Of a stretch of 64,000 nucleotides of DNA, positions 6,022-27,737 are shown one piece after another. A model generated the notes under the pieces. It was not told where the DNA came from. It worked only from the letters and a program-made list of their open reading frames with translations, and made no database searches. The translations under genes and the position numbers were made by a program. Location of the stretch: contig JAPMXV010000002.1 of NCBI GenBank assembly GCA_026936335.1, positions 248,001-312,000 on the forward strand, given 5' to 3'. Numbering within the stretch: position 1 is the first letter of the stretch; each line of letters opens with the position of its first letter. The DNA is from Mantamonas sphyraenae STR306 (taxonomy: Eukaryota > Protista > CRuMs).

Positions 6022-9000
6022 TTACTTGTCGCCACCGGTGGTCGGGGCCACGGAGCCGCCCGAACGTGTGGACGCCCACCACTTCTTAAAGGCAGCCGCC
6101 TGGGTGTCCACCCACATCTTGAAGGGCGGGTGGTTGTAGTAGGCGACGACGGCGGCGACACCACCGACAAAGATGAGGGCGCCAAAGACGATGGCGATGA
6201 TCTCGCCCACGGTAAGACCGCGAGGGCCCTCGGGCACAGGCTCGGGGTCCTCCACCGTCACCTGCGGGTGGCAACCGGTCTCGGGCAGGTTGCTGCAGGC
6301 AAACGAGGTGCCGTTGCAAGCACGAGCGGCGGCCTCGCAGGCGCTGCGGCACACGGGCAGTGCGCCGTACTCACCATGGCAGGCCGGGAAGGCCGAGGCG
6401 CAGGCAAAGATCTTCATCTTGTTGGCACACAGCGTGGTGTTGAGGTCCACACGGCCGCCATAGCGGTTCTCCGCCTCCTTGTTCCAGTCAGCGAGCGAGG
6501 CCGAGGTGTATCCGATGGGCCACGTGACCGTGTCCGCACAGAAGCCCGTCGACGGGAATGCCTGGCAGCGCGCCATGTACTTCATGGCACGTACGTCACC
6601 CGAGATCTGGGCCGGCGACTCGAGAATGGTCTGGATGTTGTCGGCGCCGTAGGACGGGGAGTTGGGCATGAGGTTGGCCGGTTCCTGGTTGCCGCCAAAG
6701 ACCATCTCGCCCGTGTCGCTGCGTGCAATGGCGTACACCTGGCTGCTCGAACCGACAAACATGCGGCGCGGCTTGGCCGTCTTGGTGTCCACGGACAGCA
6801 GGTAGTCGCACTGCGAGTTGCCGTAGCACGAGGTGAACTGACCACCCACCAGCAGCGTGTCGCTGTCAATCATCTTCAGCGCATACACAGTGCTGTCCAT
6901 GGTGCGATCGCGGTCACCCAGGCCGCCAATGGCGCCCGTGGCGCGGTTCCAGCGCATCAGGTGGCGGTTGCTCGGATCGGCATATTTGTAGTAGTAGCGG
7001 CCGCCTGCATACACACCCCTGCCTGGCACGACGGTGCTGGACAGGACAAAGCTGTTGAGACCGTAGTCGGCGGGTTCCCATCCGCTGGCGCCGCGGTTCG
7101 GGGCGTACAGCGCGTAGTACGACTGCAGGGTCTGGCCGTTGTAGGCGCGAGTCATTCCTCCGCCCACAAACACGTTGCCCTCATACACAGCCACGGTTTC
7201 GACATAGTTGTCCAGACCGCCGGCGACGCTGGTGAACGTGTCGGTGACCGAGTTCCAGCGGACCAGGTAGGCGGTGTTGCGCAGCGAAAAGTCGCCCAGG
7301 GTGCTGAAGTAGCCGCCCACGTACACATCGTCGCCGTCCTTGGCAAAGCAGGACACTTGGTTGTTGGGCTCGGCACTCAGGCGCTTGAACTTGTCCGTGT
7401 CCATGTCGTACAGCACCAGGTAGCGTGCCGGCAATGTGAACGAACCACCAATCAGCAACTTGGAGGTGCCCACGCGCGTCATGGCAAGCACGTTGCCCGA
7501 GCTAAAGGTCAGACCGCCCACTGTGGTGGTGGTCGTCTGCGAGGTGGTGTTGTAGTAGCGGAAGCCCGAAGTGCCACCCATGAACACGAGATCCTTGTAG
7601 AACTCGAGGGCAAACACGGCGCCCGGGGCACTGAGACCCGTGGGTGAGATGTAGCCGCGGTTGTTCATGGGGTCAATGTAGCGCACGTTGTGCAAGAAGT
7701 AACCGCCGACCCAAATGTGGCGCGTGGTCGGGTGCTCGCGCACGGTACGCACGTTGCTGTTGAGGTTCGTGCCAGCGCCGGTGTACACCGACTCCCAGAT
7801 CTCGGTGGCCGGGTCGAAGCGCACAAGGTAGTGGCCGTTGTTGTCCACAACGCTGGTCTGTGTGTGACCGACGTACACCCACTTGCCGTCGCGAGTGGCC
7901 TCCATGGCGTACAGGTAGTGGCCGCTGCTGGTGGAGAACTGGTTGCTGCCCTGCTGCACTGCGATGGTACGCAGCACGCCCGAAGAGGAAAAGTTGCTCG
8001 GATGGAAGTGAGCCACACGCTGGGCCGGGCTGGTGATCTGATCGAAGCCGGCAAAGCTGCCGCCCATGTACACGTCGTCGCCGACCACCTCGAGGGCAAA
8101 CACGTCGTTGTCGATGCGCTGGAACGGGCTTTCCGTCAGCGGCATCCACTTCTTGGCCACGGCGTCGTAGTGCGCCACGCGGTACATGGGCTGTCCGGCC
8201 ACCGAAGTGAAGGAGCCGCCAATGTACACGTCGGTGGTGCCGTTGACGGCGATGGCGTACACGTTGCCGTTGACACGTGCACAGGCAAAGGCCTCGAGCA
8301 CAAAGTCACCACGCACGGCGCCAAATCGCGACATGATCAGGTCGACGTTGTAAAAGTTGCCACCCACCAGTGTCTGGCCCATGAAGGTTTCGATGGCGCG
8401 CACATCGCTGCTGAACTGGCGTGCGTACTTGCGTCCGGTGAAATAGGTGCCGTTGAAGGCAGCCAGACGTTCGGTGTTTGCCACGTTGGCGCTTGAGAAC
8501 TGACCGCCTGCGAGGTTGCCGTTGGCGGAGCCGCCGATGGCGTACACGCGCGAGTTGGGGCCGCTGAAGCTGCCGATGTTCTCAAAGTAACCGGTGGTGC
8601 GGTTGAACGGGGCCATGTTGGTGATGGTCACGCGGCCTTGGTTGCCGTTGGTGAAGGACCCGGCCACACACAGGGTCTGGTGGCCGTCGATCAGGGCACG
8701 CGTGACGGCGGTGCTGCCGCCGTCGAGGCGCAGCTCCTCGGGCTTGATGCCAAACCACTTGTTCTGGGCCTTGTTGTAGCGAGCGACGGCCGAAATGGGC
8801 AGGAGGTCGTTGGCCACGTTGCCCGTGGGTGCGTTGATCGCGATCGTGGCCTGTGTGGCCACGTAGACGTCGGTGGCGGTGACGTGCAGCTGGTAGCCAG
8901 TGCTTGTCAGGCCGTACCTGTCGGCAAGGACCGAATACGAGTTGGAGTCGCGGTTGTAGCGCGCAATGTTGCTCACGGCCAAGCTGTCGACGGAGCTGAA

Positions 9001-12000
9001 GCTGCCGGTAAGGTACACGTGGTTCGCGTTGTTGGGATCGACGACCACATCGTGCACGGTGCCGCTCGCGCCAAAGCCAATGCCGAGGCTGCGAATCTTG
9101 TCGGTGTCCGAGTTGAACTCGACAAAGCGGCTGGCACGCTGGCTGACCTGGGTGAAGCTGCCTCCCACATACAGCAGACCGTTGTGCACGGCGAGCGCAT
9201 ACACGTTGCTGTTGAGTTCCTGCGACACGCCAAGGGGCGAGAAAGTGCCCGAGGCCGGGTTGAAGCGAGTGACATACTGGCTGATGCCCATGCGAGGCAC
9301 GTCAGCAAAGCTGCCACCGAGGATGATGCTGTTGCCAACACGGACCATGGCATTCACGGTGGACGAAAGGCCATAGGTGTCCGTGCCGTCACGGAGACGG
9401 TTGTAAGCAGGGCGCAGGATCTTGTCGTTGACATTGTACTTGATCAGGTAGGACGACTCGTCGCCAAAGTCCGAGGCCTCGTAGAAGCTGCCGCCGACGT
9501 AGATGTCGTCGCCATAGCGGAGCATGACCTGCACGGTGCTCGAGGTACCGTTGCCGATGGCTTGAGTCTCGCCGGTGACCATGTTGACAGTGGCGAGGCG
9601 GTTGGCCGGCTTGGCGTCGGTGAAGGTTCCCTGGGACAAGGCCATGAGGCGGTTGTTGTACTCGATGAAGTAGTTGAAGCCCTGGTAGGTGTAGGGGCTG
9701 TCCTTCTTGAGGCGGAGACTGCTGGGATCAAAGATCATGGTAGGGTAGCTGCCGTCGTGGGCGGCCCAGACCTCGCCGCGGTGGAGGGTGAGGTGGTAGA
9801 TGGTGTAGTCGGTGCGCGTGCCGCCGCCCTCAATGGCTTCGACGGTGCCTGTGGTGAGGTCGATGCGTGCAACGCCCTCGGTGCCCGAGACACCTGCGCT
9901 CGCGAAATCGCCGCCGATGAACAGGTAGTTGTTGTGGATAAGGAGGGTGTACACACCGCCATCGACGCAGAAAGCGACGTCCAAGGAGCGCTGGTTGACA
10001 CTCGTGGAGTACACACCGCGGTTGGTGGCCATGTAGACGGTGCCCGCGTACTCAGCCATCTGGTAAGTGGCGATAGCGTTTTCGGGATCCTCCAGAGCAG
10101 GGCCGTAGGGGATCCATCCACCAGTTCCGATGTTGTAGCGAACCATCTGGTAGTAGGAGACGCGCTTGGTGGCCGGGTCGGTGTACTGGACGCATGCGGT
10201 GGAGTCACAGCCGATGTAGAGATCGTCGTTGACCACGAGCAGGGATCGCACGCTGGCAGACAGCCAGACGCTGCTGGAGCGAGCCAGGGGCCCAAAGTTG
10301 TTGCCGTCCCACACGACGACGTAGTCGCCGCCACGCACGGCCGGGATGATGCCACCCACAGTGCGGTGCTGGCCACCGACATACAGAGAGGAGCCATGGG
10401 TAGCAAGGGCACGCACGGTGCCATCCACACCCTGGCGCAACTGGTAGGTGTTTCCGTTGCGGATGCGAGCAATGTTGAAGCGAGGAGAAACGTTTGTGAG
10501 CGAGCTCATGGAGCCGGCAACAAAGAGGTCCTCGCCCATGGTGATGGCCACGTAGAGGTTCATGGCACCGCCGGTGGTGATGCGCTGCGAGTACTCCTGC
10601 CAGCCGTTCTCCTGCGGGTCGTACATGACGACTTCGGACGTGTCTTGGTCGTTGTAGAACGAGTTGAAGCTGCCGCCGACGTGGAGGGTGTCACCCACGA
10701 GTTCGGCAGCGTTGACGGTGCTGCTGAAGCCTCCGCCTACGCCGTGCCAACGATCGGCACCCTGGCTCCACTGGGCCAGATAGTAGTAGTCGTCCGAGTT
10801 GGATCCACTGAGACCAGCCACGAGGCGCGGGCCGTCCACGAGAATGGAGTAGACGGTGCTGCCGAGGAACAAGTTGCCGTCGAGCGAGACAAAGTCTTGG
10901 GTGCTGTTCTTGAAGCGTACGATACGCTGGGAGGTGACGCCGTCCCAGGAGTTGCCGCTGCCACCAAAGTAGATGTACTCGGAGCCGTTCTGGGTGTTGC
11001 ACGAGTACACCCAGCTGCTGCTTGCGGACGGACCGCTGCCAAGGTCGTACATGAGCTTGTTGCCCGTGTGGTAGCGCAGCAGGTAGTCGGCACTGAGGCC
11101 GGTGTAGCCTGTGAAGCCTCCACCGAGGTAGACGTCGTTGCCCTGCACGCAGAGGGTGCGCACGTCATTGTTGAGGTTTCCTTCGTCGGCACCGCCAAAG
11201 CCGCGGTCGATGAACTTGTCGCTGGCGAGGTCAAAGATGGCGAAACGGTTTGCAGTAAACGTGTCTGCGTAGGTGAACTCTCCACCGAGGTAAAGGAGCT
11301 CGGTGCCGGGCACCTGTGCGATGGCTTTCACGCGGTTGTTGAACACCACGGGCTGTTTGCGAGGCACGGTGGCGTTGTTGGTGTCGATGACAGTAAAGCG
11401 ATCGGTAAAGTCACCGCCGGCATAGACGATGTTGGGCTTGGTGCTAGAGCGGCGCACGCTGTAGACCGCGCCGTTGAGGGTGTTTGAGGTGAACAGGGGC
11501 TCGTACGCCTTTGCGGTCAGGTTGTACTTGGCGATGTAGTCGCCTGCCGAGGTGCCCATGTTGGTGAAGAAGCCGCCGAGGTACAGTTCGTCGCCGAAGC
11601 GCTGCACAGAGTGGATCTGGTTGTTGGGCTGGGTCAGGGTGGTAAGGTCGCCTGTGGCGGGGTCGTACTCGACGAGACCGTAGGCGTTGGCCTGCTGGCC
11701 GTTGAAGGAGCCAACGAGAATGAGGCGCTTGCCGTCTGCGGTGGGGACCATGTCGTAGACCTGGCCGCCGGAAAGGCGGCAAGGGACGTCAGACCACTTG
11801 TTGGTGGTCTCGTTGTAGCAGACAATCTTTTCGGTGGTGATCGAGGGGCCGGAAAGGTCGCGGGCGTTTGACTGACTGATGGAGCCTGCAATGAAGAGCT
11901 CCTTGGTGGGGTTTGCAAACGGATGGCCGTTGACGGAACAGGACGAACGGGCCGAAACCTTGCCCGACACACAGGCCACGGTGGGCATGGAGGCGTCGCA

Positions 12001-15000
12001 GAGGTCTGCGGCAGGGACGCCGCAGGATGAAGCCCAGTTGTCGCACTGGCTCTTGCACAGAGGCTTGGCGGCGTCCTGGTTGTCGCAGGTGGGGAAGAAC
12101 TTGTGGCAGAAGTACTCCTTGGCAGCGGCAGCGCATCCCTCACAGGTGGTGGTGGACGCGTGGGTGTGTCCGGCGGCGCGGTTGTTTGCCTCGCCCTGAG
12201 CGATGGCAGCAGAGACGCGGTGGTCTGCGCCGAGGGTGCTTGCGCAGAAGGCGCCCTGCTTGGGGTCAACGGGCACGCAACGAGTCACCTTTTGGTTGGG
12301 CACGGGTGCGCGCGGGCTGATTGCGTTGCGCTTGGTGCGCGCAGGCATGCAGTTGGACGTGGGCAGCGAGGCGCACGAGTCGGAGCGGGAGCAGGCCGTG
12401 TTGGATGCGCTGCAGACGCTCTGGCACAGAGGGGCGGCTCCGTTGGTGGTGTTTGCAAAGCAGGACGGGAAGCGCGTGCCACACACGTAGGCCTTGTATG
12501 CGGCGAGGCAGTCGGAGGACTTGCCCTCGGCAACGCGTGCGTCGTAGTCGGCCTTGGCGGCGAGATCGAGGCTGCGGTGTTGTGCGCTGAGGGCAGTGGT
12601 CGGGTAGTCGACGGAGCAGAACGGAGTCAACAGCTGGTTGGGAATGGAGCAGAGGCCTGCGGGGCCGGCCTTGGCCAGGGCGTAGACGGGTCCGTTGATG
12701 CCCTGGAAGCGTGCGACCTGGGCGGTGCCCGAGGGCGGGTTGAGCTGGACGCGAGCCAAGTAGGTGGACGGGATGCCACCGTACATGGTAAAGTCGCCGC
12801 CGAGCCACATGTCGGAGCCGTCGATGAGGATGGCGCGGACATTGCTGTTGAAGTCGCTGTAGGTGACGTTGGCCCAGGTCTGGGTGCCAGGGGTGTAGCG
12901 GGCCACACGTGCGTAGGGCGTGGTGAACGCGCCGCCGACGTAGACGTGGGAACCAGCAGTGGCGAGGGTGTACACGTCGTTGTTGGGTTCTGCGACGCCG
13001 TTGGGCAGGCAGTTGATCTGGCCCGTGGTGCTGTTGTAGTAGGCAAGGTACCTGCAGCTGAGTGCGTTAGAGCCCGTATCGGAGTTTGAGGTGATGGTCA
13101 GGAAGTTCTTGGCCGCGTGGTAGCCGATCCAGTAGACGGGGTTGTTTGCACCGCTGCGCTGCTGGTTGCTGTTGGTCAGGAAGCGGTCGGTGTAGGCACC
13201 TGCGGTGGTGTCGTACTCGGCCAAGTAGTTGCGGTTGCCGTTGGAGCCGATGCTGCTGAACGAGCCGCCGATCATGAGCTTGTCGCCCACAGGCTTGATG
13301 TGCCAAACAACGCTGTTTGCGCCTGCGACGCCGCCAGCGGCGGAAAAGGTGCCTGCGCTGAAGCGTGCAAAGTAGTCTGCGTTTGCGTCACCGTTGAGGT
13401 TGGTAAAGGCGCCGCCAAGGTAGACGTCGTTGCCGACAAGGGCAATGGAAGTGACGTAGTTGTTGGGGTTGACAGCGGCCTGGAGGTAGCTCCAGGCATT
13501 GACGGACCAGTCGTAGACGGCGACATACGAGGCAGGGACGGTGCCGGTGGAGGTAAAGTCACCGCCAGCGTAGATGAGGTTGCCCTTGACGGCAAGGGTG
13601 CGCACGTCGTTGTTGAGGGTGGAGTTTGCCAGCGCAGAGAAGGTCTGCGAGGTGACGTTGTACGAAGTGATGTACGCACCGTGGTTGGTAAAGTCACCGC
13701 CGAGGATGATGATCTCCGAGTTGAGCTTGGCAAGGGCACGGACGCGTGCGTTGAGGGGGCTGGTGGTCGGGGCGTGCCAGGTGCCGTCTGCCGGGACGTA
13801 GTAGGCAAAGTTGTCTGCGTTGCCCTGGTTGTCGGCGTTGGAAAAGTCGCCACCGACGTAGAGGCGGCCATTGTCGGCAAGGAGAGCGCGGACAACGGTG
13901 TTGAAGACGACGCCATTGTTGCCGATGCTGGGCTGCAGGGCCTGGACCTGGCGGTTCGCCATGTCGTAGGCAAACAGGTAGCGGGTGCCGTAGATGTTTG
14001 CGACGTCGTTTGAGAACTGACCACCGATGTACCAGACGTCACCCATGATGGCGTCGGCAAGCATGAGGTTGTTGGGACCGTAGCTGGAATCCGGGAACAT
14101 GGACTCAAACATGCTTGTGGCGCGGTTGTACAGCACGATCTCCTTGCTGTAGACGCGTCCGGTTTCTGTGAATGCGCCTCCGATGAAAAGGTCGTTTGCG
14201 TTTGCCGGGGACGGGGTCATGGCATAGACGGCGGAGCTGAAGTAGTAGTCCTGGTCGACGAAGCGCTGGGTGACCATGTCCATGATGGCAAAGCGGGAAC
14301 GTTGGTAGCTGTTGCGAGTGTAGCGGGTGGATGTAAAGTCACCGCCGAGGAAGACAGCCTTGTTGCCGTTGTACATGCCGACGTGGATGGCGCGCACGTT
14401 GTTGTTCAGGGTGTCGTTGCCGTTGCGTCCGTTGTAGGAGTCGAGGGCGTAGACGTTGTTTGTGTCGAGGTCGATGACACCGACGCGCTGGCAACGGGAG
14501 CAGTAGCCGAGCTGTCCAAAGGAGCCGCCGACGTAGAGGTCGTTGTTTGCGGTGTCGTGGTAGAGGGTGTACACGGTGCTTTGTGGTGTAGGCGTGGTTG
14601 TACGGTGTGCTGACGCCGTCCTGTGTGTGGCGCTGCAGGTAGTAGGTCTGGACGCCCATGCTGCTGCCCTGGCCCGCAACAAAGAGGTTGTTGTGGATGT
14701 CGTTGATAGCCCAAACGGTGCTTCCAATGTTGCCAGTGAGGACGCTCTGGATGTTGTCGTTTGCATCGACGCCTGCGAGGTAGCGGTGGGTGTAGTCGGG
14801 GTCACTTTGCGTAATGCCGCCTCCCACGAGGACGGTGTTTGCGTCGTACATGTCGAGTGCATATGCGGTGCCGCTGGGAATGCGGTCGTCGCGTGTCACG
14901 TATCGCCAGACACCAGTGCGTGCGTTCCAGATGGCGACGGGGCCGACGGGCATGGCTTGGTTGCCCGGGGTGGTCTGGAAGGCACCGGCGACAATGACGT

Positions 15001-16575
15001 TGTCGCCCTGGACGGCGATGGCCTGGACAGTGCCTCCGACGCCAGCGTAGTCGCCGCGACGGCCACCAAGGCGATGGTAGCGGTTGGTGTTGAAGTCGTA
15101 GCGGACGATGTAGTTGGAGCCGGGCACGTCTGTGAGGGCGCCGAAGGAGCCTCCGATGAAGAGGGAGGATCCGTTGAGGACGAGGGTGTAGACGGAGCTG
15201 GTGGGGCCCTCGCAGTTTGCGAGACGGCGGAAGGTGTCTGTGGCGTTGTTGTAGACGGCGATGTAGTCAAGGAGATAGTCGCCGTCGACGTTGGAAAAGT
15301 CGCCTCCAACAATGATTGTGTTTGCATCGCGGATGGCGATGGCGCGGACATCGTTGTTGAGGGCATTGTTTGCCAGACGGTTCCACTGCTTGGTGGAGCG
15401 AGTGTACTTGGCAATGTAGTTTGCGCCGGCGGAGGTGATGCCTGTGCCCTGGACACCGACAAAGAGGTCGTCGTTGCCGAGCATGGCAAGAGCCCAGACG
15501 TCGGTGTTGAAGGGCTGGGCGTTGTCGACGGCACGCATTGTGCCTGTGTTGACGCCGTCCCAGTAGGCGAGCCTGTCAGCGTTGACGTCGCCAGCAGCAT
15601 TGGTGAAGGAACCACCAATGTACATGCCGTTGGTTCCGTCGTTTGCCGGGGTAATGGCAAAGACGTTGCCAGACATGAGGGGCGTTTTGTCCAACTTGGG
15701 GGAGGACGAGTTTGCGGCGGCAAGACCGACGGCTGAGGTGGTCGGGTTGCTGCCCACGGTGGTGAAGGTACCACCGATGACGATACCAGGACTAGATGGG
15801 CTGCTGTAGATGGCGCGCACCTGGTTGTTGGTGTTGAAGTCGAGGTTGCGGACGTTTGTGATCTCGAGGGTGTCGAGCTTGAGGGCAAAGAGGTCCGAGT
15901 AGGTGAAGGCGTTGTTGGGGAGATCGCGAGTGACGCGAGAAAACGATCCTCCTATGTAGATGGGATTTGCAGCTGTGGAGAGGGGTTCGGTGAGGGATTG
16001 GCAGGGTGTGAGGGAGCGTTTTGGCGCAGGTTGACCGTTGGTTACATTGGGAAAACGGTTTGCGAGAGGGCACACTCAGAAGAGTGAGGGCGGGCAGACA
16101 CGGCCATGGTGGATGCCAGGAGGGTGCCGGGTGGGTAGTGGGCTGGCGTGGGGAATATGGGCGGCGGTGGTGGGCGGGTGTGGATGCGCGCATGGAGGAA
16201 AAAACGGAGGGGAGGGGAGTGTGCGCGCGTAAAAGAACCGGGGCGGCAAGATCGAAGCGGGGGGTGGGCACAAGCCATCCGTGATCGCAGCATGCAGGCA
16301 GAGGAGACGGGAGAGCAAAAGTGGGAGAACAAACGGGGATGCGGGTAATGCATGCATGGTGGCCAAAGGCGTGCTTGGCCAAGAGGCGAGGAGAACGGGC
16401 GCACAGAGTGTGGAGAGGAGCTGCATGAACGCTGTGGAAGAATTCGTGTTGCGAGAAGGGATCGCAAGAGGACATGGCAAGTGGTAGAGACGGGCAGGGA
16501 GAGGGACATACCCATGGCGAAAGCCGCAATGCCCAAAAGGAGCAGGATGGGAAGCGTTCGATTTGTTGTTCTCAT
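6022..16575 (-). CDS. Giant type-I membrane protein A (~3,340 aa): signal peptide, Rax2-like beta-propeller repeats, three Frizzled-type CRDs, one TM, short tail; exons 16575-16512, 15972-6022; probable +1 indel at ~14581
   Basis: Signal peptide MRTTNRTLPILLLLGIAAFAM. Intron 16511-15973 (GTATGT...CTCAC...CCACAG) is in frame (G|CT). Dozens of 'lyvGGxFt...vxal' blades. Cys-rich modules with C-x3-FP-x-C...P-x-C-x3-C-x6-C at ~12347-12651, ~11971-12279 and ~6271-6567. TM IIAIVFGALIFVGGVAAVVAYY. Confidence 0.85.
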
Positions 16576-16663
16576 GCGAATCGCTGCCGGTTTTGGTTGG
16601 GGCAGCCCGCGGCCAGCACGCAGGCGGCCACAGGGCTCTCGCGATGGCTGACAGAAGAGCAAC

Positions 16664-17430: not shown

Positions 17431-17621
17431 TTGGTTGACGAAAAACTGTTGAGCTGGGTGAGGCGGTGCGAGGGCGTGGACCATTGCAATTGTTGGTGGT
17501 GCATTGGGTTGGAGGAGAGAAGAGGATGCTGCATGTGGTCAAGGGGTCAAAAGGTGTGCCTGTGGTTTCGTGTGTGGTTCCCTGTGGCGTCGCCGCACTC
17601 AACATTTTTCATCGAAGAGCA

Positions 17622-20600
17622 ATGACAACACCACGCTCGACAGCCTTGCTGTTGGCCTTGTGCTGCATCATTGCTTCGACTATTGCAGCCTCTGACTATG
17701 TAGTCGGAGGAAGCTTTACGTATCTGAGGGAGACGAATCCGCCCACGACCAACCTGCGACAGGGTGTGGTGATGTGGGACACGGCAGCAAACACGCTGTC
17801 GACGTTCAAGGGGATCACCCCGAACAACTACGCTCTGGCCATTGTGGAGCGCAATGGAGGCGTGTACATCGGTGGACGCTTCTCGAGCTTCACGAACGGC
17901 ACGACGACGTCGATCCCGGCGCCGTACTTTGTGCATCATGGAAGCGGGGCGAATGCTGCATTCGACACGCCGCCTGGCGTGAATACGTTTGTGAACGCAA
18001 TCGCACCGGCGTTGGACAAGACCAACGGTGTGTACCTGGGTAAGTTTGTGTGTGTGTGTGATGCGATTGCACCCCATCCTGCGCTACGCCGGCAAAGGCT
18101 GCACAGCTGCAATTGGGAAATTGGCCCTAAAAAGGCTACTGCAAGTCCGCTGCACCCTGAGCTTGCGCACGGAGGCATGCGCATTGGCCGTGCATACACG
18201 TCGCCCAAAAGGCTTTGTTATCAAGGGGAGCCTTGGAGAGGGTAGAAGTATGCATGCCAAGCCAACTGCATTTGCAGGAGTCGCAGGCGCGCTGCGAGGC
18301 TGCACCACAGTGCACAATTTTGTGTGTCGCTGACAACCTGCCGCAACTCACATCCGCCCCCCTGCACACAGCGGGAGATTTTACATCCCCTGCCGGACGC
18401 GTTCAGTACTACAACCCGGCGACCAACACCTACACGGCCGTGTCAGGCTCTAATACGCTTGGCCAGGTGCTGGCCATGAGTACGTTGTCGTGAGCGCGCG
18501 AATTCGCCAGTTGCGCTCTTGTGGAAAAGTGAGGACAACACAGGCCGAGGATGGTCCAAACTAAAAACTAACACACAATGGTGCACGACACACAGCCATG
18601 GTGGGCACCAACGACCTCTTTGTGGGTGGCAACTGGAATAACGGACCGGGTAGCCCTGCATCCAACGATGTTGCTCGCTACACGATCAGCACGAACCAGT
18701 GGAACAGCCTGGGCGCTTCTCCGTCGCACATCAGTGGTACAGTGTTTGCTTTGGCCGCAAAGGATGCGCAGAACATCTTCATTGGAGGTTCGTTCACGTA
18801 CGTCCCCAACACGGCAGGCAACAACCTGCTCCGGTACAACAACGACACCAACGAGTTTATCCCCTTGACTGGATGCGACACGTTCGGAGGCGTTGTGTAC
18901 GCCCTCGCGGTCGACGGCAACACGCTGTGGATCGGATCGAACAGCGGCGTCTCGGGACATGTGTACGTACTTGGGTACGACATCCCGACACGGCGCTACT
19001 TTGGCCTGAAGGGCCAGGAATCGGGTAGCCACGTTGGTATCAGCAGCACTGTGCAAAGCCTGGCCGTGCGTGGCAACATCCTTGCCATTGGAGGCAACTT
19101 TGTTACAACGCGTGACAGCAATTCGCCCGCTCCGTATGTGGCACTGTACAACAAGGTCACGGGTGCATGGACGTACCCGCTGCCTGCAGACGGCCAATCT
19201 CTGCGATCCACGGCGTACGTTGTGGCCTGGCTCAGCGACACTCAGTTGCTGATCGGCTCGTCGGCGACGGTGGCTCCTGCGTTCAACCTTGTTCAGTACG
19301 CGGCGGCTGTCGGCAACGGTGGCAAGACAATGCAGCCTCTGGATAGCACGAGCGTCACACGCTCGGGCAACGTGCTCGACATGCTCAGCACGGCTGCTGG
19401 CGAGCTGTGGATTGCTGGTAGCTTTTCGACGCACGAGGCGAGCACCAACTATCTGTACAAGCGCACGTCGACCAACGCTATGGTGCAGCCCTTCCCCAAC
19501 GCTGCCATCAACGGCAACGTGCGTGAGCTGTACCACCACGCTGCATCGAACACGCTGTATTTTGGTGGCGATTTCTCAAGCGCGGGCGCGTGCCAGGACA
19601 CGCGCTGCCGCTACGTGGGTGCGATCAACCTGGCCACAGGCGCGTACTCGCCTGTGTTTGTGGAGCCGTACATGGCCAATGGTGGCGTGTACTCGCTCCA
19701 GCGGGTGAAGGACCCGCAGAACAACAACGACCTGCTCCTGGTTGGTGGCTCCTTTACCAGCCAGTACGGCTATTCTTACGGCAACGACTACTTTGTAGTG
19801 TACGATCTCACTGCCAACAAGTGGAAGACCGACGTTTGGGGCACCAACAACATTGTGTACGACATGGTGGCTGTGCCTGGCAGTACGACGGACGCCTACG
19901 TCGTAGGTTCCTTTACCCAGGGCAATTACCTGAGGAGCGGCAGTCTGCTGTCGTACTCGTACAGCATGGACCGCTTCCAGCAGTCCAACCCTGCCAACCA
20001 GGACCTGGCCGGCGACGTGTACACTGTGGCTATGCTGGCCAACACGGACCGTTTGGTGGTGGGTGGCTCGATGACCAGCGTGCGTGGCACAACTGAGTCT
20101 CGCTACCTTGCACAGTGGGTCATCGGCACGAACAACCCGATCCCGCTGTACAACGAAGGCACGTCCAGCAGCACGCCGTCCTTCAACGGCCAGGTTGAAC
20201 ATGTCATCAACCACAACGGACGCTACTTTGTGGCCACAGGGGCAACCAACATCAACAGCGTCGCCAACAACGACTATGTGGTGGAGTACCTGCCGGCTTC
20301 CAACACGTACGTGGCCCCGTGCATGGGCAGCGTGCCTTCGGCCGCAACATACCTGGCTGTGTCCGCTGACAACAAGTGGCTGTACATCGCCACGTCGACC
20401 AGCAACGCACGCGTGATTCGCTGCGACCTGACCAACAGCAGCAGCTCGTACGAGACAGTGTCGACGACGACGGTGAACAACGTCATCAACGTGATGGTGC
20501 AGGACAAGAACAACGCCAGCATCTGGTGGCTGGGAGGCCAGTTTTCCTCGCCGTACAACTACCTGATGCGTCTGGACACGTCCTCCATGTCGTACATCGC

Positions 20601-23600
20601 ATTGCCTGCTGGCATGGCCGCTCCTTCAGCCTCTGTGTACGGCATTGAGTACTACAACAACTGGTACTACATGACGGGTGCTTTTACAAACGCAGGTGGC
20701 TTTGCCTACTTTGCCAAGTTTGACGGCACGCAGTACCAGAACCCGCTGTCTGCAGGCAGCCCCAATGCGGTGCTTGGCAGTCCTTTTCTCCCAACTCGGG
20801 TGTGACTCTGGTGGGTACAACCGGCAAGGCCATCCTGACTGGATCGTTCACCAGCATCAACGGCAACAGCAGCTACCGCTATGTGGCCGAGGTCGATCTG
20901 AACACGGGCGTGCTGACGCCGCGCTTCATGCGCGACAACGTGGACTGGACTTCCGGCTCTGATTCTGCCTGCTACAACGCCTGGTGGATTGCGGGCAAGG
21001 ACCGTGTGTACATGTCCTGCAGCAACAGCAACAACTACCCAGGATCGACCACGGTTTCCTACTTTGGCGTGTATGACGGCGCACGCCGTCGTGTGCGTGC
21101 TGTGTCGCAGGCGAGCACGCAGCCCAACTCACAGATTGTGACCATTGCCCTCAAGGGCAACATGGTGTACCTGGGAGGCAGCTTCACCACGCCAGCCCAA
21201 CGCATCATGAGCTGGAACCCGGCCACTGACACGTTTGCCGCGCTGCCGGCCAACAACGGCGGCAGCGACAACACCAACGGTCAGGTGGAAAAGATCCTTG
21301 TGGACGGCAACAACCTGGTCATCGGCGGTAGCTTCACCACTCTGTTGAACAACGCCGACGCCGACTACTTTGCCGTGTGGAACACGACGACGGTGCTGCC
21401 GCCCGATGTCACCTCGCAGGGCACCGTGTACACCATCGTAAAGGCCAACGTGAACCTTGGCCTGAACGTGCAAACGCGCAACCCGGAGATGTGCGTGTGG
21501 GTCTGGACACCGCCTCGACCCCGTTCTGCGGCCCTCTGCTGGGCGGCAGCTACATGGTGTCGAACAAACTGGCGCTGCGCGACGCTGACCGCCGTGCCAT
21601 GTACGCCGCTCGTGGCGCTGCAGCCGCCTGCCAGGCGTGCACCGACGCAGCCAAGCAGCTGTACTGTGGCAAGTACCTGCCGCAGTGCAACTCGCCCAGC
21701 GACGCGGCGCAACCGGTGTGCAAGACCGAGTGCGACAAGTACGCCGACACGTGTGGCGTGGACAAGGCGCTGGTGTGCTCCAGCTATGCCACGGCCAACT
21801 GCCGCCAGAACGTTGTGACTGGCGGCAACCCGTGTGACATTGGTGGCAACGTCTTCAACGATCCGGCACGCGAGCTTGTGGTCGGTGGCAGCTTTTCCAG
21901 CACCAATGGCGACACCCTGCGCCAGAACCTGATGTCGTGCTACAACAGTGCCACCAACACGTGGCTGATGGATGGTTGCCGCGCCTCCGGCACCGTGTAC
22001 CATTCCCTGCCCACCGGCGACGGCAAGTTCTGGGTGGCTGGCAATTTCCAGTCCCAGACCAATCCGGCCATCAACTACCTGGGGTTGTTCAACCCGATGA
22101 CCAATGCCTTTGAGTCCCTGCCTGGCTTTGTGAACTCGAACCCGAACAACGTTGTGCGCAAGCTGGCCCTGCGTGGTGGCTCTCTGTACTTCTCGGGCGA
22201 CTTTACCAACGTGTACGGCTCGGGCGCCAACTACATTGCCCGTTACAACATCAGTGCCAGTCGGTGCACCGCGTGGCCACGGGCACGCAGCCGAACAACG
22301 GTGTGTACGACTTTGAGTGGACGACCGATGGCTCCATCATGTGGCTCGTGGGCACTTTCACCACCTTTGGTGGCATTGCCAACGCAAACCGCGTCGGTGG
22401 TCTGTTTGTGAACAACGGCACGCTGGTGCCGGGCCCCATGGGTTTGGACAACGTGGTGAACACCATCGCCAGGGTGGCCAATTCCGACACCTTTGTCCTG
22501 GGTGGTTCGTTCAACTACGACAGCACACAGGTGCTGCCCAACGCGGCCCGTCTGGTGGCGTACAACCCGGCGACGGACATGTTTGAGGAGCCTCTGCCTG
22601 GACAGAACTCGAACATCAACAGCGAAGTACGCACGCTCACTCCTGTGGGCACGGTCATGTTTGTGGGTGGTCGCTGGAGCAGTGCTTTCGGCTCGAGCAA
22701 CTACCGCGAGGCATTCATTCTGGACGTGCCCAAGAACACCGTAGATCGTGTGGGGTACCGTGGTACGGTGAACAGCGACGTTTACGCCAGTTGCCCGGGT
22801 GTCAATGCCAACGAGGTCATCTTTGGTGGTTCTTTCAGCCAGGTGGACTCGCGCACGGCCCGCTACGTGACCCGCTACAACGTAGCCACGCGCCAGGTTC
22901 TTCCCCTGTCTGACCCCAACAACCTGATGAGTTCTACGGTGTACTCCGTGGCGGTCGGTCTGCATCCGTACGAGACGCTTGCTGGTGGCTCGTTCAGCTC
23001 CAGGCTGGCTTTGCACGACGACATCTCATCCGGCTGGATGCGCCCCGGACAGGGTGTCTCGAGCACTGTGTGGACCATGACCAAGGTGGACGACTACAAC
23101 TTCCTGGTGGCTGGTGACTTTCAGTACACGTATGCTGGCCCGGAAGGCAGCGTGTTGGTGCTTGACGGCGACGACATCACCAAGGACATGCTGACTTCTA
23201 GCTCGATCCCCTTGCTGGATTATTCCAACACTGGCTCGAACTATGGCCACCAGGTGACGGCCAACGGGGCGATCTGTATGTTTCGGGTCGCTTCTACATC
23301 GTCTACCGCGACTACCAGAACGGTTTCTATGCCAACGGCATCGTACGTTTCACCAAGAACTCGCCTGAACCGCAGCTGCTTGGTGGAGGCATCTACGGCG
23401 GCGGTGTGAGCAACACACACATTTGGCGCGATCGTGTGGTCGTCACAGGCGGCTTCCGCGGCGCCTTTGGTGCTCCTCTGTCTGCATTTGCGGCTGTGTG
23501 GGATCCTTTGTCCATGTTCTGGACCGGTCTGGACCAACCCGAGCCCTTTAGGCTTGTGGGCGAGATCTCGCGATCGGTCCTGGATGGCTCGTGGCTGTAC

Positions 23601-26600
23601 ATCGCGTGCAATGACGCCGATGGATGTTTGCGCGAAAAGTTGGGCACTTCCAGCAAGCTGTACCACGCAGCCCGATACAACTTGGAGTCGCGTGTGTGGC
23701 AGCCCATTGGGCAACCGACTGTGTTTGGCCTGAGCATCTTCAGTGTGGCCATGCAGAGCGGCAAGATGTTCTTTGGCACAAACCAGGGTCTGTTTATGAT
23801 CCCCATGGACAACTTGCAGGCTCAGTTTGAGCGTGTCGCTTGTATCTCGCAGTCCATCAACGCCCTGGTGGCACATGACGGCGGTATCTACATCGGTGGC
23901 ACATTCAGCTACCTTGGCGACAAGCCGACAGACATCTTGGCGTTCTACAACGTCACTGAGGACAAGCTCGTCACCGGCTTTGCCGACGATGTTCACCGCG
24001 AGGGTCTTCTCTCCTCTGTTCAGCAGATGATGATTGATGCAAAGACGGGCAAGCTGATTGTGCGCTCGGTCAACCAATTTGCTTCGGTGGACCCTGGCAA
24101 CAACCATGCGGTGTCCATTCTGTCGAACCTGGATGTCGGCGGAATGACCATTTCGGGTTGGTCCTATGCAGGCGGTCGTCACTATGTGATGGGCGACGGC
24201 GACCTGAACCGCAAGACCTTGAACCGCGTTGCCATCACGAACCCGATCTCCGGTCAGTTTGTGCCCGTGGAGAACGGCACCAACTCGGGTGTGTACGCAT
24301 CGCTGCGTGTGGGCAACTCCATCTTCCTCGGTGGCGCGTTTACCGTGGCCGGCACGGTGTTCAACTCTGACCGCTTCGTGCGCGTGAACCTGGCTACCAT
24401 GAAGTTTGAGGCTGCGTATGACGGCAGCAACGGCAACGGGCTGCCCAACTCGGTGTGGAGCATGATTGAGCACAACGGCATGGTGTACCTTGGCGGTGAC
24501 TTTGGCGAGAATGTTCAGGGCAGGATTTCTGGATACGTGACCAAGTACGATCCCAGCACCGAGCGCATGATGCCCTTGACCACGAGCGCGTCAGTCACCA
24601 ACGGTGGACGTGTGTACGCACTGGCCTGGTACAACAACCGCCTCTACATCGGTGGCACCTTCACCAGCAACATTGGTCGCTTGACCCACAACGGCTTGGG
24701 TGAGTTCAGCTCGAGCAGCCCCAGCTTCAAGTCGTACGGTCTGTACAGCGGTGCCACGGTGTACTCTGTGGCCACCCATCCGACAAACAGCGACATCGTG
24801 TACGTGGGCGGCACCTTCAACGTGCCCGGTAGCAGCTCGACCAATCTGGCCAAGTACAGCCGCAGCACGCGCGTGTTCACGCCGCTGCTGCACCCGGACA
24901 CCGACGGTCTGGTCCGCTCTGTGATGGCCATGTCCAACGGTGACCTGTACATCGCTGGATCCTTCTCGCAAATTGTGAGCCTGGACTACATGTACGTGTC
25001 GACCGGCCTGGTGACACGCTACGTGGCTGCCACCAACAGCTTCGTGGACGTCACGGGACAACCGAGCAACTCGACGTGGTACTCTGGTCAGGGCTACGGT
25101 GCAGTCAGCAGTGGAACGTACACTTGCGCCTATGGCTCCATCTCGCACGACACACCCCGCACGGGTGCAGTTGCACGCTGGAGCTCTGCCACCAAGGAAT
25201 TCACCGCCTCTCTGCGTGGCGTGGCCAACGGTTTGGGCTCCACCGTGTACACTGTGTTTGGCACCGTGAACGGTGTGGCCGCAGGCGGCACCTTTAGTGC
25301 CCCTGAAGGCGTGGGCATGAAGGCCGGCCTTGGAGGACGCATTAGCATCTTCAACGGCACCTCGTGGGATACACCGGCCGAGAAACGCCGTGCTTTCACA
25401 AACACTGTGTTCTCTTCCATTCCGTACGGTGGTGCTGCCCTTGTGGGCGGAGGTTTCCAGACGGGCTATGCTCTGAACGGCATTGTGGAACTGCTGGACG
25501 GCTTCGATGCCAAGAGCCTGGGTTGCAACAACTTCAACTCCATCCTGGCCATCGAGCGCAATGGAACGGACCTGTATCTGGGCATGGACGGCACATCGTT
25601 TGGCCACGAGCGCTATGGCTCTGTGCTGCGCTACAACTTGGACACACGCGAAACCAAGAGCGTGTCGACGACGGGCGAGGACTACCTGCAGAACTCGGTG
25701 AACGCACTGCTGGTCAAGGGCAAGTACCTGTACATCGGCGGTAGCATGTCTGGACTCAGCACCGATGGCGACTTTGTGCGCTTTGTCGATTACGACCCGG
25801 CCACGGAGAAGTTTTCGCCGCTGCGACTGACCAACGTCATCGGCAACACCATTTTCGCGATGCACGAACGCACCGCCGAAGAGGTTGTGCTTCTGGGTGC
25901 GTTCTCATTCACCCTGCGCAGCCAGAACGTGCGATACGCAGTGTTGTACAACCCTGTGACGCGTCTGCTGTCGCCCATGGACTCGGGCGCGAACGATCAA
26001 CTCCCCAATGTTGCCTACTCTGCTACCGAGTGTGGTGGCTCTCTTTACGTGGGTGTCAGCGGTGGAGTGTACGAGTGGACCAACTCTCCCAACACTGGCT
26101 TCGTCTTTGTGGAGGGGTCGCCTACAGGCGTTGTCAACGCACTGATGTGTCACAACGGCATTCTGTGGGCTGGTTTGACGTCGTCGCCGTACTTGTACAA
26201 GTACAACTCGACGGCAAGCACCCCCTGGACGAATGGGTTTGGGTTTGCACAGAACCCAACTGCCAACGTCAACCCGAACTCGAGGATCAACACCTTCACC
26301 ATGATCAGCAACGACGTCATGTTCGTGGGTGGCGCCTTTTCCTCTCCGTACCGCTACGCTATGATGTTTGACATGAAGCGTGAGGTGTACATGCCGCTGA
26401 ACGGTGCTTATCTGACCGGCGAGGTGTTTGCGGCCCACAAGCGTGGCAACATGTTGTACCTGGGTCTGACCAACTCTGTGGTGGGCACACGCTCGTCGTA
26501 CGAGTCACACATTGTGCAGGTGGATCTGACGACGTACGAGTGGATGGCCATGGACAATGGTCTGAACTCGGACGTGCGTGCCATCACAAGCGACGCAAAC

Positions 26601-27737
26601 TACCTGTACGTGGGTGGTTCGTTCTCTGCGCACGGCGCTTTCACGCAGTCGAACCGTCTGCCGCTGCAGTACACTGCCAAGTACTCGTTCGCCACCAAGA
26701 TGTGGCTGCCGATGAGCCGTGCGCGCCTGGGAAGCACTGTGTATGCCATGCACGTGGCCCAGAACGGCAAGGTGCTGGTCGGAGGTCAGTTCAGCAACCT
26801 GGTCACCCAATCTGAGGGCTACCAAGGTCTGACTCGCTACAACGCTGAGACGGATCGCCTGGAGCCGCTGACTCTGTCGCTCAGCAACGACTTCCCGACT
26901 ACGGTGGAGCTGTTGCGCGACATGGGTGACTTTATGCTTGTGGGTGGCACCTTTACCAACGTGCTTGGTGTTTCTGCCTACGACCGTGCAGTGCGTGTGT
27001 ACTACGGTGACCATTCGATCCAGGCCATTGCCAACGTCGGGTCGTCCGTGTACGACGCCACCGTTTTGGACGGCAAGATGTACGTGGCGGGTGCTTTCAG
27101 CTCAAGCGTGGGCACTCTGGAGACTCGCAACGGGCAGGTGCGTCTGAGCACGCTGGAGGAGCAGTTTAGCGGTAAGGCAGGCCTCAATGGTCAGGTGCGC
27201 TCGATCAAGGGCATGGCACAGTGCCAGCCGTTTAGCGCTGTGGTGTCCAACGGCTTCTGCTCGGACACGGTGACGTGGCAGGTGGGCATGGTGTCCGGTG
27301 CGGACTACGGTGCGCTGGACAACGAGGCCAAGAGCCGCTTTGACAAGCGCAACAACAAGACGAGCGGCGACTGCGACAAGGCCATGAAGCTGTACGCGTG
27401 TGCATCGGTGTTCCCTGGCTGCCACGGCGAGACCGGAGCCGTGCCTGTGTGTCGCCAGACATGCGAGCAGGCCACCAACCTGTGCAACAACGAGTTTGCA
27501 TGCTCGGCCTTGCCATTGAACGACTGCTACCCGCAGACGCCTGTGCCCGCACGTGTGAAGCCGCCCGCGAACCCGTTCCTTGGCCTGACCGCTGGTGAGA
27601 TTGCCGGCATTGTGATCGGCAGTGTGCTCTTCTTGGGTGCTGTCGGCGCCGGTGTCATGTACTGGAAGAACCCCGCCTTCAAGTTGTGGGTGGACGGCAA
27701 GGTTGCCACCGCCAAGACCAAGCTGAACCGTGCCTAA
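17622..27737 (+). CDS. Giant type-I membrane protein B (~3,220 aa), paralog of A: signal peptide, Rax2-like propeller repeats, two Frizzled-type CRDs, TM, short tail; exons 17622-18039, 18372-18479, 18596-27737; four apparent indels (~20778, ~21498, ~22258, ~23268)
   Basis: Signal peptide MTTPRSTALLLALCCIIASTIAA. Introns 18040-18371 (GTAAGT...CACAG) and 18480-18595 (GTACGT...CTAAC...CACAG) are in frame. Successive ORFs 18598, 20802, 21377, 22264 and 23406 are collinear with protein A. CRDs at ~21492-21802 and ~27221-27527; TM ~27582-27665. Confidence 0.85.

What the first reader, a model, noticed from the sequence alone, without database searches (positions are those of the whole stretch)
6022..27737. 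Head-to-head pair of giant Rax2-like beta-propeller / Frizzled-CRD single-pass receptors
Seen: two collinear paralogs (~3,340 and ~3,220 aa), divergently oriented with ATGs ~1 kb apart. Each has a signal peptide, ~1,200 aa of GGxF-type blades, internal CRD(s), ~1,800 aa more blades, a juxtamembrane CRD, one TM and a short tail with no catalytic domain. Established: fungal Rax2 is a type-I propeller protein acting as a cortical polarity landmark; Frizzled-type CRDs bind lipids or lipidated ligands. Inference: this propeller+CRD combination, which I cannot match to a described family, may be a heterodimeric surface sensor, adhesin or polarity landmark of a flagellate. It conceptually puts an LRP-like propeller array and a Fz-like CRD in one chain. 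The copies are strongly diverged yet both retain all modules, implying an old, maintained duplication.
Basis: partly seen in the sequence, partly recalled or inferred. Interest (0 to 1): 0.85.

Follow-up and report, generated by a model that had tools for sequence, protein, structure and literature searches.

The report
Giant propeller–Frizzled-CRD surface proteins, Mantamonas
Two neighbouring genes of the gliding marine flagellate Mantamonas sphyraenae encode intact, very large single-pass surface proteins (about 3,300 residues, roughly 45 propeller blades plus Frizzled-type cysteine-rich domains), a domain combination found so far only in Mantamonas and of untested function.

Summary
The window matches the Mantamonas sphyraenae assembly (25.06 Mb, 78 contigs). 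Gene A (minus strand, 16575 to 6022) gives 3,337 aa. Gene B (plus strand, 17622 to 27737) gives 3,222 aa. Both have a signal peptide, about 21 Rax2/DUF5122-type blades, internal Fz CRDs (two in A, one in B), about 21-26 more blades, a 10-Cys membrane-proximal Fz CRD, one TM helix and a 25-37 aa tail.

The ATGs are 1,047 bp apart, but a Cpn10 gene fills that gap, so the two genes do not share a simple bidirectional promoter. All four frameshifts in B are assembly errors: contigs of three public runs restore the frame. One spliced contig confirms B's first intron, which indicates transcription.

The CRDs are Fz-type by Pfam, by a PDB profile search and by Foldseek. The blades match only part of the Rax2 model, and their nearest relatives are bacterial.

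The genome has four paralogs; the scan had already flagged the other two, on other contigs. One of them carries TIG repeats and a TRP-like multi-pass domain. The only close homolog elsewhere is a Mantamonas plastica transcript orthologous to A, so the A/B split predates that speciation. No paper describing this architecture was found.

Function is inferred, most likely surface adhesion or sensing. Heterodimerisation is unsupported.

The parts
16512..16575 (-). Gene A exon 1: ATG and signal peptide (21 codons plus 1 nt)
   Evidence: Hydrophobic N-terminus and a GTATGT donor. The spliced product matches the N-terminus of M. plastica P0023.
15973..16511 (-). Gene A intron 1 (GTATGT..CAG, 539 nt)
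   Evidence: Inferred from the sequence and from the in-frame join. Supported by collinearity with the M. plastica transcript-derived protein. Not checked with reads.
6022..15972 (-). Gene A exon 2, including the stop codon. It holds one assembly frameshift at the AAA run near 14581.
   Evidence: ORFs 6022..14862 and 14339..16075 are collinear with B and with P0023. Reading the frameshift as an assembly error is an inference.
12652..15972 (-). A: N-terminal array of about 21 Rax2/DUF5122-type blades
   Evidence: Pfam Rax2 and DUF5122; custom blade HMM built here.
11761..12651 (-). A: two internal Fz-type CRDs (24 Cys)
   Evidence: Pfam Fz E 1.3e-10, 42.2 bits, two stretches; Cys cluster.
6616..11760 (-). 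A: C-terminal array of about 26 detectable blades
   Evidence: Custom blade HMM. The AF2 model of the last 1,121 aa is all-beta. Its best Foldseek hits are tandem propellers such as BT4663 and BT4673.
6262..6588 (-). A: membrane-proximal 10-Cys Fz-type CRD
   Evidence: Pfam Fz. All ten Cys are invariant in 5 homologs. PDB profile hits are only Fz-type CRDs. The top 50 Foldseek hits are all Fz-type CRDs.
6025..6204 (-). A: TM helix (6136-6204) and 37-aa cytoplasmic tail carrying the conserved P-x-F-K-x-W-V-D motif
   Evidence: Hydropathy; conservation; genome search.
16664..17250 (-). Intervening Cpn10/HSP10 gene with an intron. Not part of the family, but it sits between the two ATGs. The upper bound is approximate.
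   Evidence: Pfam Cpn10 E 2.8e-23, in two stretches; translation.
17622..18038 (+). Gene B exon 1: ATG, signal peptide and first blades
18039..18370 (+). Gene B intron 1 (GT..AG, 332 nt)
   Evidence: A spliced contig in run X3 skips exactly this stretch (table 5).
18371..18479 (+). Gene B exon 2
18480..18595 (+). Gene B intron 2 (GTACGT..ACAG). Inferred; not seen spliced.
   Evidence: The frame needs it, and the splice consensus fits. Two contigs (X3 record 6, X4 record 10) run into it unspliced.
18596..27737 (+). Gene B exon 3, including the stop codon. It holds four assembly indel errors, at 20780, 21493-21494, 22256 and 23265.
   Evidence: Contigs of X1, X2 and X3 (and X4 at the last site) carry +1, -2, +1 and +1 nt at these places (table 4). 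The corrected CDS is open for 3,222 codons.
21490..21980 (+). B: single internal Fz-like CRD (14 Cys)
   Evidence: Cys cluster. The Pfam Fz match is weak, E 0.0017, on a piece cut by the frameshift. It aligns with the second internal CRD of A.
27222..27527 (+). B: membrane-proximal 10-Cys Fz-type CRD
   Evidence: Pfam Fz E 4.7e-7, 30.8 bits; alignment A1.
27591..27734 (+). B: TM helix and 25-aa tail with N-P-A-F-K-L-W-V-D

Best explanation
A and B are two intact, anciently diverged members of a four-gene, so far Mantamonas-specific family of giant type-I cell-surface glycoproteins.

Each protein projects about 45 Kelch/Reg_prop-class blades of the Rax2/DUF5122 type. That is enough for about six or seven propellers, though the number of blades per propeller was not determined. 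The blade array is interrupted by one or two Fz-type CRDs. It is anchored by a conserved module made of a membrane-proximal Fz CRD, a TM helix and a short tail.

The most likely role is extracellular binding. The proteins would act as a surface adhesion or recognition array, for substrate, prey or glycans, on this gliding bacterivorous flagellate. The conserved CRD-TM-tail module would pass that contact to a cytosolic or membrane partner.

Shown here: the gene structure, the intactness of B, the domain identities, the paralogy and orthology pattern, the conservation gradient, and transcription of B.

Inferred: surface location, ligand binding and any signalling.
For: - Gene models and open frames.
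- Signal peptide, single TM helix and short tail.
- Blade and CRD identity.
- The last 1,121 aa of A fold as an all-beta model. Its best structural matches are the tandem-propeller periplasmic sensor domains of Bacteroides hybrid two-component systems, which sense glycans, followed by other multi-propeller ectodomains.
- The CRD, linker, TM helix and tail are the most conserved parts. A and B are 44-54% identical there, against 25-29% in the blades. The anchor module is therefore under stronger constraint than the binding array.
- The tail motif is shared by A, B, the contig-74 paralog and the M. plastica ortholog.
- The contig-37 paralog carries the same ectodomain followed by 4 TIG domains, DUF7630 and a TRP-like multi-pass region. 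The Pfam TRP match is weak, and the ESM Atlas score is 0.96. In one family member, then, this ectodomain is physically joined to a putative channel.
- Mantamonas is a marine gliding flagellate (PMC10492846).
- Expression: a spliced contig for B, and complete transcript ORFs for the A ortholog in M. plastica.
Against: - There are no localisation, binding or expression-level data.
- Both AF2 models have low confidence (pLDDT 61 and 57).
- NxS/T sequons are few for such large ectodomains: 24 in A and 15 in B.
- The sensing inference rests on one paralog and on structural analogy.
Confidence: 0.5

Rival explanations
1. Passive coat. The proteins build a glycocalyx or spacer layer on the cell or flagellar membrane, like the giant repeat protein FMG1B of Chlamydomonas cilia. 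They would have no specific ligand and no signalling role.
For: They are huge repetitive ectodomains with a minimal tail. The blades evolve fast, at 25-29% identity between A and B. FMG1B is a membrane-anchored giant repeat protein that forms the ciliary coat, and its loss did not significantly change gliding (bioRxiv 10.1101/2024.09.28.615573).
Against: The tail motif and CRD are strongly conserved across 28%-identical paralogs, which points to a specific partner. One paralog is fused to a TRP-like multi-pass domain.
Confidence: 0.25
2. Rax2-like cortical landmark. The proteins would mark cell poles or division sites and recruit polarity GTPase modules, as fungal Rax2 does with Rax1.
For: Pfam Rax2 PF12768 is the top family. 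The type-I topology is the same as in Rax2.
Against: The reported best-scoring matches are repeated partial hits, covering only positions between about 1 and 157 of 254. The other families listed at E up to 0.1 were Fz, DUF5122, Kelch-type motifs and weak chance-level hits. These proteins are about three times the size of yeast Rax2 (about 1,200 aa, from my own knowledge). Fz CRDs are not known to me in fungal Rax2. The nearest blade relatives are bacterial DUF5122/T9SS proteins, not fungal Rax2.
Confidence: 0.08
3. A and B form a heterodimeric receptor whose Fz CRDs bind a lipid or a lipidated ligand.
For: The genes are adjacent and divergent. Fz CRDs are known from the literature to bind lipids and to dimerise (PMC5458758, listed).
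Against: A Cpn10 gene separates the two genes. The B-type paralogs on contigs 74 and 37 have no adjacent A-type gene. The complex prediction gave no support, which is not evidence against binding. No Wnt-like ligand was sought or is known here.
Confidence: 0.07
4. Gene B is a decaying pseudogene, as its four frameshifts would suggest.
For: The assembly shows four frame changes within 2.5 kb.
Against: Contigs of three or four independent runs restore the frame at every site. One of those runs is near-identical to the window (4 base differences). A spliced contig also exists. The assembly was built from PacBio reads polished with Racon and Pilon.
Confidence: 0.02

Closest known systems
Mantamonas plastica EP00003 P010540-P010543 (P0001 and P0023; uncharacterised transcriptome ORFs of 3,224 and 3,286 aa)
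   Same: The whole architecture is shared: signal peptide, blades, two internal CRDs, blades, membrane-proximal CRD, TM helix and the same tail motif. It is 39% identical to A overall and 59% over the CRD-TM-tail module.
   Different: It comes from another species and is the ortholog of A only. No B-type counterpart was found there. It lacks A's R-T-K-R insert.
Fungal Rax2 (cortical bud-site and cell-end landmark; Pfam PF12768)
   Same: Both are type-I membrane proteins with the same blade type in the ectodomain and a short tail.
   Different: Only part of the Rax2 model is matched, repeatedly. The Mantamonas proteins are about three times larger and carry Fz CRDs. No partner or landmark function has been shown for them.
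Bacterial DUF5122 ('delta-60') / Reg_prop propeller proteins, including the twin-propeller sensor domains of Bacteroides BT4663 and BT4673
   Same: They are the closest sequence relatives of the blades outside Mantamonas (25-40% local identity) and the best structural matches.
   Different: They are bacterial, with T9SS, Ig or kinase contexts, and have no Fz CRD. The Mantamonas genes have introns, signal peptides and a eukaryotic TM anchor.
Fz-type CRDs of Frizzled, Ror2, MuSK and sFRP
   Same: The 10-Cys pattern, the helical core and the Pfam Fz match are shared. The aligned Cys positions from the third Cys onward, as far as the alignments reach, fall on cysteines of FZD2 and FZD8.
   Different: The Mantamonas CRDs are not attached to a class-F 7TM domain, a kinase or a netrin domain. 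Lipid or ligand binding is untested. Sequence identity is only about 20-25%.
Giant protist proteins with a membrane-proximal Fz-like CRD: Thecamonas trahens AMSG_05495 (P0045), and the unnamed P0126 and P0150
   Same: They are about 3,300 aa long, with an Fz-like CRD just before a C-terminal hydrophobic anchor.
   Different: Their ectodomains have no Rax2-type blades. Only the CRD region is alignable.
Chlamydomonas FMG1B ciliary coat glycoprotein
   Same: It is also a giant, membrane-anchored repeat ectodomain on a gliding flagellate.
   Different: It is built of Ig-like repeats with a multi-helix TM domain, and it is not homologous to these proteins.

Membership tests
Fz domain (Pfam PF01392; Frizzled-type CRD) | Pfam model matched above the gathering score | tested here: met
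   - A: 52.6 bits against a cut-off of 32.1.
- A's internal CRD pair: 42.2 bits.
- Contig-74 paralog: 37.2 bits.
- M. plastica ortholog: 56.1 bits.
- B's membrane-proximal CRD is just under the cut-off, at 30.8 bits, E 4.7e-7.
Fz domain (Pfam PF01392; Frizzled-type CRD) | Ten conserved cysteines | tested here: met
   Ten Cys are invariant in all 5 membrane-proximal CRDs. In the printed alignments to FZD2 and FZD8, the aligned Cys positions from the third Cys onward fall on cysteines of those proteins.
Fz domain (Pfam PF01392; Frizzled-type CRD) | Mainly helical Fz CRD fold | tested here: met
   The AF2 model has three core helices, with pLDDT 61. The top 50 Foldseek PDB hits are all Fz-type CRDs, with probability 0.6-1.0 (at or above 0.9 for the top 38). 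The E-values are only about 4e-3 and the TM-scores 0.4-0.58. The feature is met at moderate confidence.
Fz domain (Pfam PF01392; Frizzled-type CRD) | Hydrophobic groove that binds a lipid or lipidated ligand | not testable with these tools
   The model confidence is too low, and there is no ligand data.
Rax2 (fungal landmark protein; Pfam PF12768) | Full-length match to the Rax2 C-terminal propeller model | tested here: not met
   The hits are significant (E 3e-54), but every reported best-scoring stretch is a partial match within positions of about 1-157 of 254.
Rax2 (fungal landmark protein; Pfam PF12768) | Protein of about 1,200 aa, with Rax2 as the only fold and no CRDs | tested here: not met
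   The proteins are 3,337 and 3,222 aa and carry 2-3 Fz CRDs. The size of yeast Rax2 is from my own knowledge.
Rax2 (fungal landmark protein; Pfam PF12768) | Type-I topology with a C-terminal TM helix and a short tail | tested here: met
Rax2 (fungal landmark protein; Pfam PF12768) | Works with a Rax1 partner at cell poles | not tested
   No Rax1 search was run, and no localisation data exist.
LRP5/6-type YWTD propeller receptors | YWTD (Ldl_recept_b) blades with EGF spacers | tested here: not met
   No such Pfam family was listed at E up to 0.1. LRP2 and LRP4 appear only as generic tandem-propeller structural matches, with TM-scores of about 0.15.
Class F GPCR (Frizzled/Smoothened) | CRD followed by a Frizzled-type 7TM domain | tested here: not met
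   A and B each have a single TM helix. The multi-pass paralog on contig 37 resembles TRP/Flc-type proteins, not Frizzled 7TM receptors.

The most novel reading that the evidence does not exclude
In CRuMs, and possibly in the common ancestor shared with Amorphea, the Frizzled-type CRD may have served as the membrane-proximal coupling module of giant surface sensors long before Wnt and Frizzled existed. In Mantamonas it would link a multi-propeller 'antenna' either to a short adaptor-binding tail (A, B and the contig-74 paralog) or directly to a TRP-like channel (the contig-37 paralog). That would make the family a polycystin-like contact or mechanosensory system for flagellar gliding and prey capture. 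Giant proteins of Thecamonas and of other, unnamed sources, with different ectodomains but the same CRD-anchor arrangement, would be parallel uses of the same module.
Probability: 0.15. Interest if true: 0.75.

Novelty: new variant of a known kind. Interest (0 to 1): 0.45.

Why it matters
Mantamonas belongs to CRuMs, a deep-branching lineage near the base of Amorphea (PMC10492846). Fz-type CRDs are best known from animal Wnt, Hedgehog and receptor tyrosine kinase signalling. Here they sit in a protist, in a new context: inside and at the foot of giant propeller arrays. Their membrane-proximal position recurs in unrelated giant proteins of Thecamonas and of other, unnamed sources. That gives a concrete, testable handle on what the CRD did before animal signalling arose. 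It also identifies candidate surface molecules for adhesion, gliding or prey recognition in a lineage with no functional data. On the practical side, this locus carries at least four read-verified indel errors in the published assembly, so automatic gene models here are probably broken.

Tried and rejected
- Complex prediction of the A and B CRD-TM-tail modules gave 'no answer' (score 0.00). This is not evidence for or against binding.
- A metagenome scan with the CRD-TM-tail alignment found no relative.
- An ESM Atlas search with B's C-terminal 1,442 aa gave only weak (0.81) bacterial DUF5122/Rax2 clusters.
- A homology search with B's first 727-aa exon piece found only bacterial or metagenomic propeller proteins. 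It found no eukaryote and no B-type M. plastica fragment.
- The custom blade HMM run against the 149 other CRD-bearing hits found no second propeller-plus-CRD protein.
- A paper search for Rax2 together with Frizzled listed no paper holding both terms.
- PDB sequence search of the contig-37 paralog's multi-pass C-terminus gave nothing significant.
- The pseudogene reading of B was rejected on the evidence.
- Short introns as the cause of B's four frame changes were also rejected. The junctions are gap-free against the contig-74 paralog, and DNA contigs carry the missing or extra bases.
- The AF2 model of the last 1,121 aa of A was too uncertain (pLDDT 57) to count blades per propeller or to place the CRD relative to the propellers.
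Full report
**Source organism**

The window is G000:C2:248001-312000 of a 25,061,354-base genome in 78 contigs, with GC of about 60%. These figures match the FALCON assembly of Mantamonas sphyraenae: 25.06 Mb, 78 primary contigs, GC 59.19%, PacBio reads polished with Racon and Pilon (PMC10492846). The only close homolog elsewhere is from Mantamonas plastica (EukProt EP00003). Mantamonas is a marine gliding flagellate of the CRuMs supergroup.

**Gene A (minus strand)**

- The 2,946-codon ORF 6022..14862 is preceded by a 578-codon ORF, 14339..16075, in another frame.
- Both ORFs carry Rax2-type blades and are collinear with gene B.
- The frame change lies at an AAA run near 14581. Removing one A gives a junction of the same length as in the M. 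plastica ortholog and the paralogs. I infer an assembly error; reads did not verify it.
- An upstream 64-nt exon (16575-16512) encodes a signal peptide and ends at a GTATGT donor. The acceptor CAG at 15973 joins it in frame.
- The resulting N-terminus matches that of the transcript-derived M. plastica protein.
- The product is 3,337 aa.

**Gene B (plus strand)**

- The ATG is at 17622, and the CDS runs through two introns (18039-18370 and 18480-18595) to the stop at 27735-27737.
- The assembly shows four frame changes in the last exon. Against the intact paralog on contig 74, these junctions are gap-free.
- Logan contigs of runs X1-X4 were laid on 17450-23449. Every contig covering the sites differs from the assembly exactly there: one base put in after 20780 (after 20782 in X2), two bases left out at 21493, one put in after 22256, and one put in after 23265 (table 4).
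- Applying these changes gives an uninterrupted 3,222-codon CDS. Its junctions align with the paralogs.
- Gene B is therefore intact. The 'four same-direction frameshifts' are residual indel errors of the long-read assembly.
- A 237-nt contig of run X3 skips 18039-18370 (GT..AG). This confirms intron 1 and shows that spliced RNA of B exists (table 5).
- Intron 2 is inferred only. Two low-depth contigs run into it unspliced.

**Arrangement**

However, a Cpn10 gene with an intron lies on the minus strand between them (Pfam E 2.8e-23). A's ATG is 89 bp downstream of the Cpn10 stop codon. B is thus divergent from Cpn10, and A follows Cpn10 in tandem.

**Architecture**

- Both proteins start with a signal peptide.
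- About 21 blades follow in A (17 detected in B).
- Next comes a Cys-rich insert, with 24 Cys in A and 14 in B.
- About 26 further detectable blades follow in A (25 in B).
- A 10-Cys module, one hydrophobic helix and a tail of 37 aa (A) or 25 aa (B) end the protein.
- The blade consensus from a custom blade HMM built here is of the L-Y-V-G-G-x-F type, with a period of about 55-60 aa. That HMM finds 47 blades in A and 42 in B.
- Pfam calls the blades Rax2 (PF12768; E 3e-54 in A, 1.9e-30 and 1.4e-14 in pieces of B), along with DUF5122 and weak Kelch or Reg_prop matches.
- Every reported best-scoring Rax2 stretch covers only positions within about 1-157 of the 254-position model. The similarity is therefore at the level of repeated blades, not of the whole Rax2 domain.

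**Are the Cys modules Fz domains?**

- Pfam Fz scores 52.6 bits in A, against a cut-off of 32.1.
- A's internal pair scores 42.2 bits in two stretches.
- B's membrane-proximal module scores 30.8 bits, E 4.7e-7.
- In an alignment of the five membrane-proximal modules, all ten Cys are invariant.
- A profile of that alignment hits only Fz-type CRDs in the PDB: FZD1, 2, 4-8 and 10, Ror2, sFRP3 and MuSK. The best E-value is 5.4e-5, and the alignments place the query cysteines, from the third Cys onward, on cysteines of FZD2 and FZD8.
- An AF2 model (pLDDT 61, three core helices) returns Fz-type CRDs as all of its top 50 Foldseek hits. Probability is at or above 0.9 for the top 38 and falls to 0.6 by rank 50. 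E-values are about 4e-3 and TM-scores 0.4-0.58.

**The propeller part**

An AF2 model of the last 1,121 aa of A is all-beta up to the CRD, but it has low overall confidence (pLDDT 57). Its best Foldseek matches are the twin-propeller periplasmic sensor domains of Bacteroides hybrid two-component systems BT4663 and BT4673 (E about 1e-16). Generic tandem propellers follow, including LRP2, LRP4 and WD40 pairs. The number of blades per propeller could not be determined.

**Family and distribution**

- The genome holds four members: A, B, a 3,046-codon open frame on contig 74 (7975-17112, minus strand), and a 4,327-codon open frame on contig 37 (278377-291357).
- Overall identities: A to B 28%; B to the contig-74 paralog 45%; B to the contig-37 paralog 38%; A to M. 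plastica P0023 39%.
- A therefore has an ortholog in another species that is closer to it than B is. The A/B duplication predates that speciation.
- B, the contig-74 paralog and the contig-37 paralog form a second subfamily with a single internal CRD.
- Conservation is uneven. Between A and B the blades are 25-29% identical. The membrane-proximal CRD is 50%, the linker 54%, the TM helix 48% and the tail 44%.
- The motif (N/H)-P-x-F-K-x-W-V-D follows the TM helix in A, B, the contig-74 paralog and the M. plastica protein.
- After its membrane-proximal CRD, the contig-37 paralog continues with four TIG domains, DUF7630 and at least five hydrophobic helices. That C-terminal part resembles TRP-C-terminal/Flc-type multi-pass proteins: ESM Atlas score 0.96 with 226 of 256 shared features, and a weak Pfam TRP match.

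**Outside Mantamonas**

- Searches of 5.8 billion proteins, with the C-terminal 597 aa and with the CRD-TM-tail alone, found only the M. plastica protein as a CRD-bearing relative. All other hits were bacterial or metagenomic DUF5122/Rax2 repeat proteins without Fz.
- A profile search of 1.84 billion representatives found one strong hit, the same M. plastica protein (E 5.8e-100). After it came many weaker Fz-CRD proteins.
- None of those 149 other hits has these blades.
- Three of them are giant proteins (3,282-3,434 aa) with an Fz-like CRD just before a C-terminal hydrophobic anchor but with unrelated ectodomains. They are Thecamonas trahens AMSG_05495 and two unnamed proteins.
- A metagenome scan found nothing.
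- No paper holding both 'Rax2' and 'Frizzled' was among those listed.

**Function**

Nothing here measures function. I commit to surface adhesion or recognition with coupling through the conserved anchor module, at confidence 0.5. The grounds are:

- The type-I topology and the very large propeller array.
- The propeller array's nearest structural analogs, which are bacterial glycan-sensing twin propellers.
- The stronger constraint on the CRD-TM-tail module.
- The natural fusion of the same ectodomain to a TRP-like multi-pass domain in one paralog.
- The gliding, surface-associated lifestyle of the organism.

The main rival is a passive coat like Chlamydomonas FMG1B. A Rax2-like landmark role and an A-B heterodimeric lipid-ligand receptor are possible but lack specific support. 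The complex prediction gave no answer, and the other two paralogs, on other contigs, have no A-type gene beside them.

**Verdict**

Both genes are intact, B on read evidence and A on inference. The architecture is undescribed as far as these searches reach, and it is confined to Mantamonas. It is built from known modules, so I rate it a new variant of a known kind, of moderate interest. The scan had already flagged the two other paralogs on other contigs.

Noticed in passing
window 16575-17622: A complete Cpn10/HSP10 gene with an intron lies on the minus strand between the two giant genes. Gene A's ATG is only 89 bp downstream of the Cpn10 stop codon, so A's 5' end and promoter must overlap the 3' end of Cpn10.
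   Followed up: partly
window 20780, 21493, 22243, 22256, 23265: Four indel errors and one base difference (22243 T>G) are shared by all covering contigs of runs X1-X3. They cluster within 2.5 kb of the published assembly, which suggests a locally unpolished patch. Gene models here are probably broken in the public annotation.
   Followed up: yes
G000:C37:278377-291357 (L013-L017): A fourth paralog forms a single 4,327-codon open frame: blades, internal CRD, blades, CRD, then 4 TIG domains, DUF7630 and a TRP/Flc-like multi-pass region. It lies near a contig end.
   Followed up: partly
G000:C74:2052-4742 and G000:C37:291504-294755: The contig-74 and contig-37 paralogs both lie within about 20 kb of contig ends. 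Each is flanked by copies of the same gene, with near-identical C-terminal peptides. This suggests subtelomeric segmental duplication.
   Followed up: no
P0045 (Thecamonas trahens AMSG_05495), P0126, P0150: These are giant proteins of about 3,300 aa without Rax2 blades, but with an Fz-like CRD immediately before a C-terminal TM or GPI-like anchor. The Thecamonas model also carries an N-terminal cap-methyltransferase domain, which may reflect a gene-model fusion.
   Followed up: partly
It is therefore not conserved.
   Followed up: partly
window 17469-17633: The stretch just upstream of and across B's ATG (17622) shows several small indels and base differences between the contigs of runs X1 and X2. 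These are probably allelic variation in a diploid.
   Followed up: no
G000:C42:535091-535372, C52:386373-386597, C20:92117-92344: Only three further weak Fz-like CRD matches exist in the whole genome outside this family.
   Followed up: no
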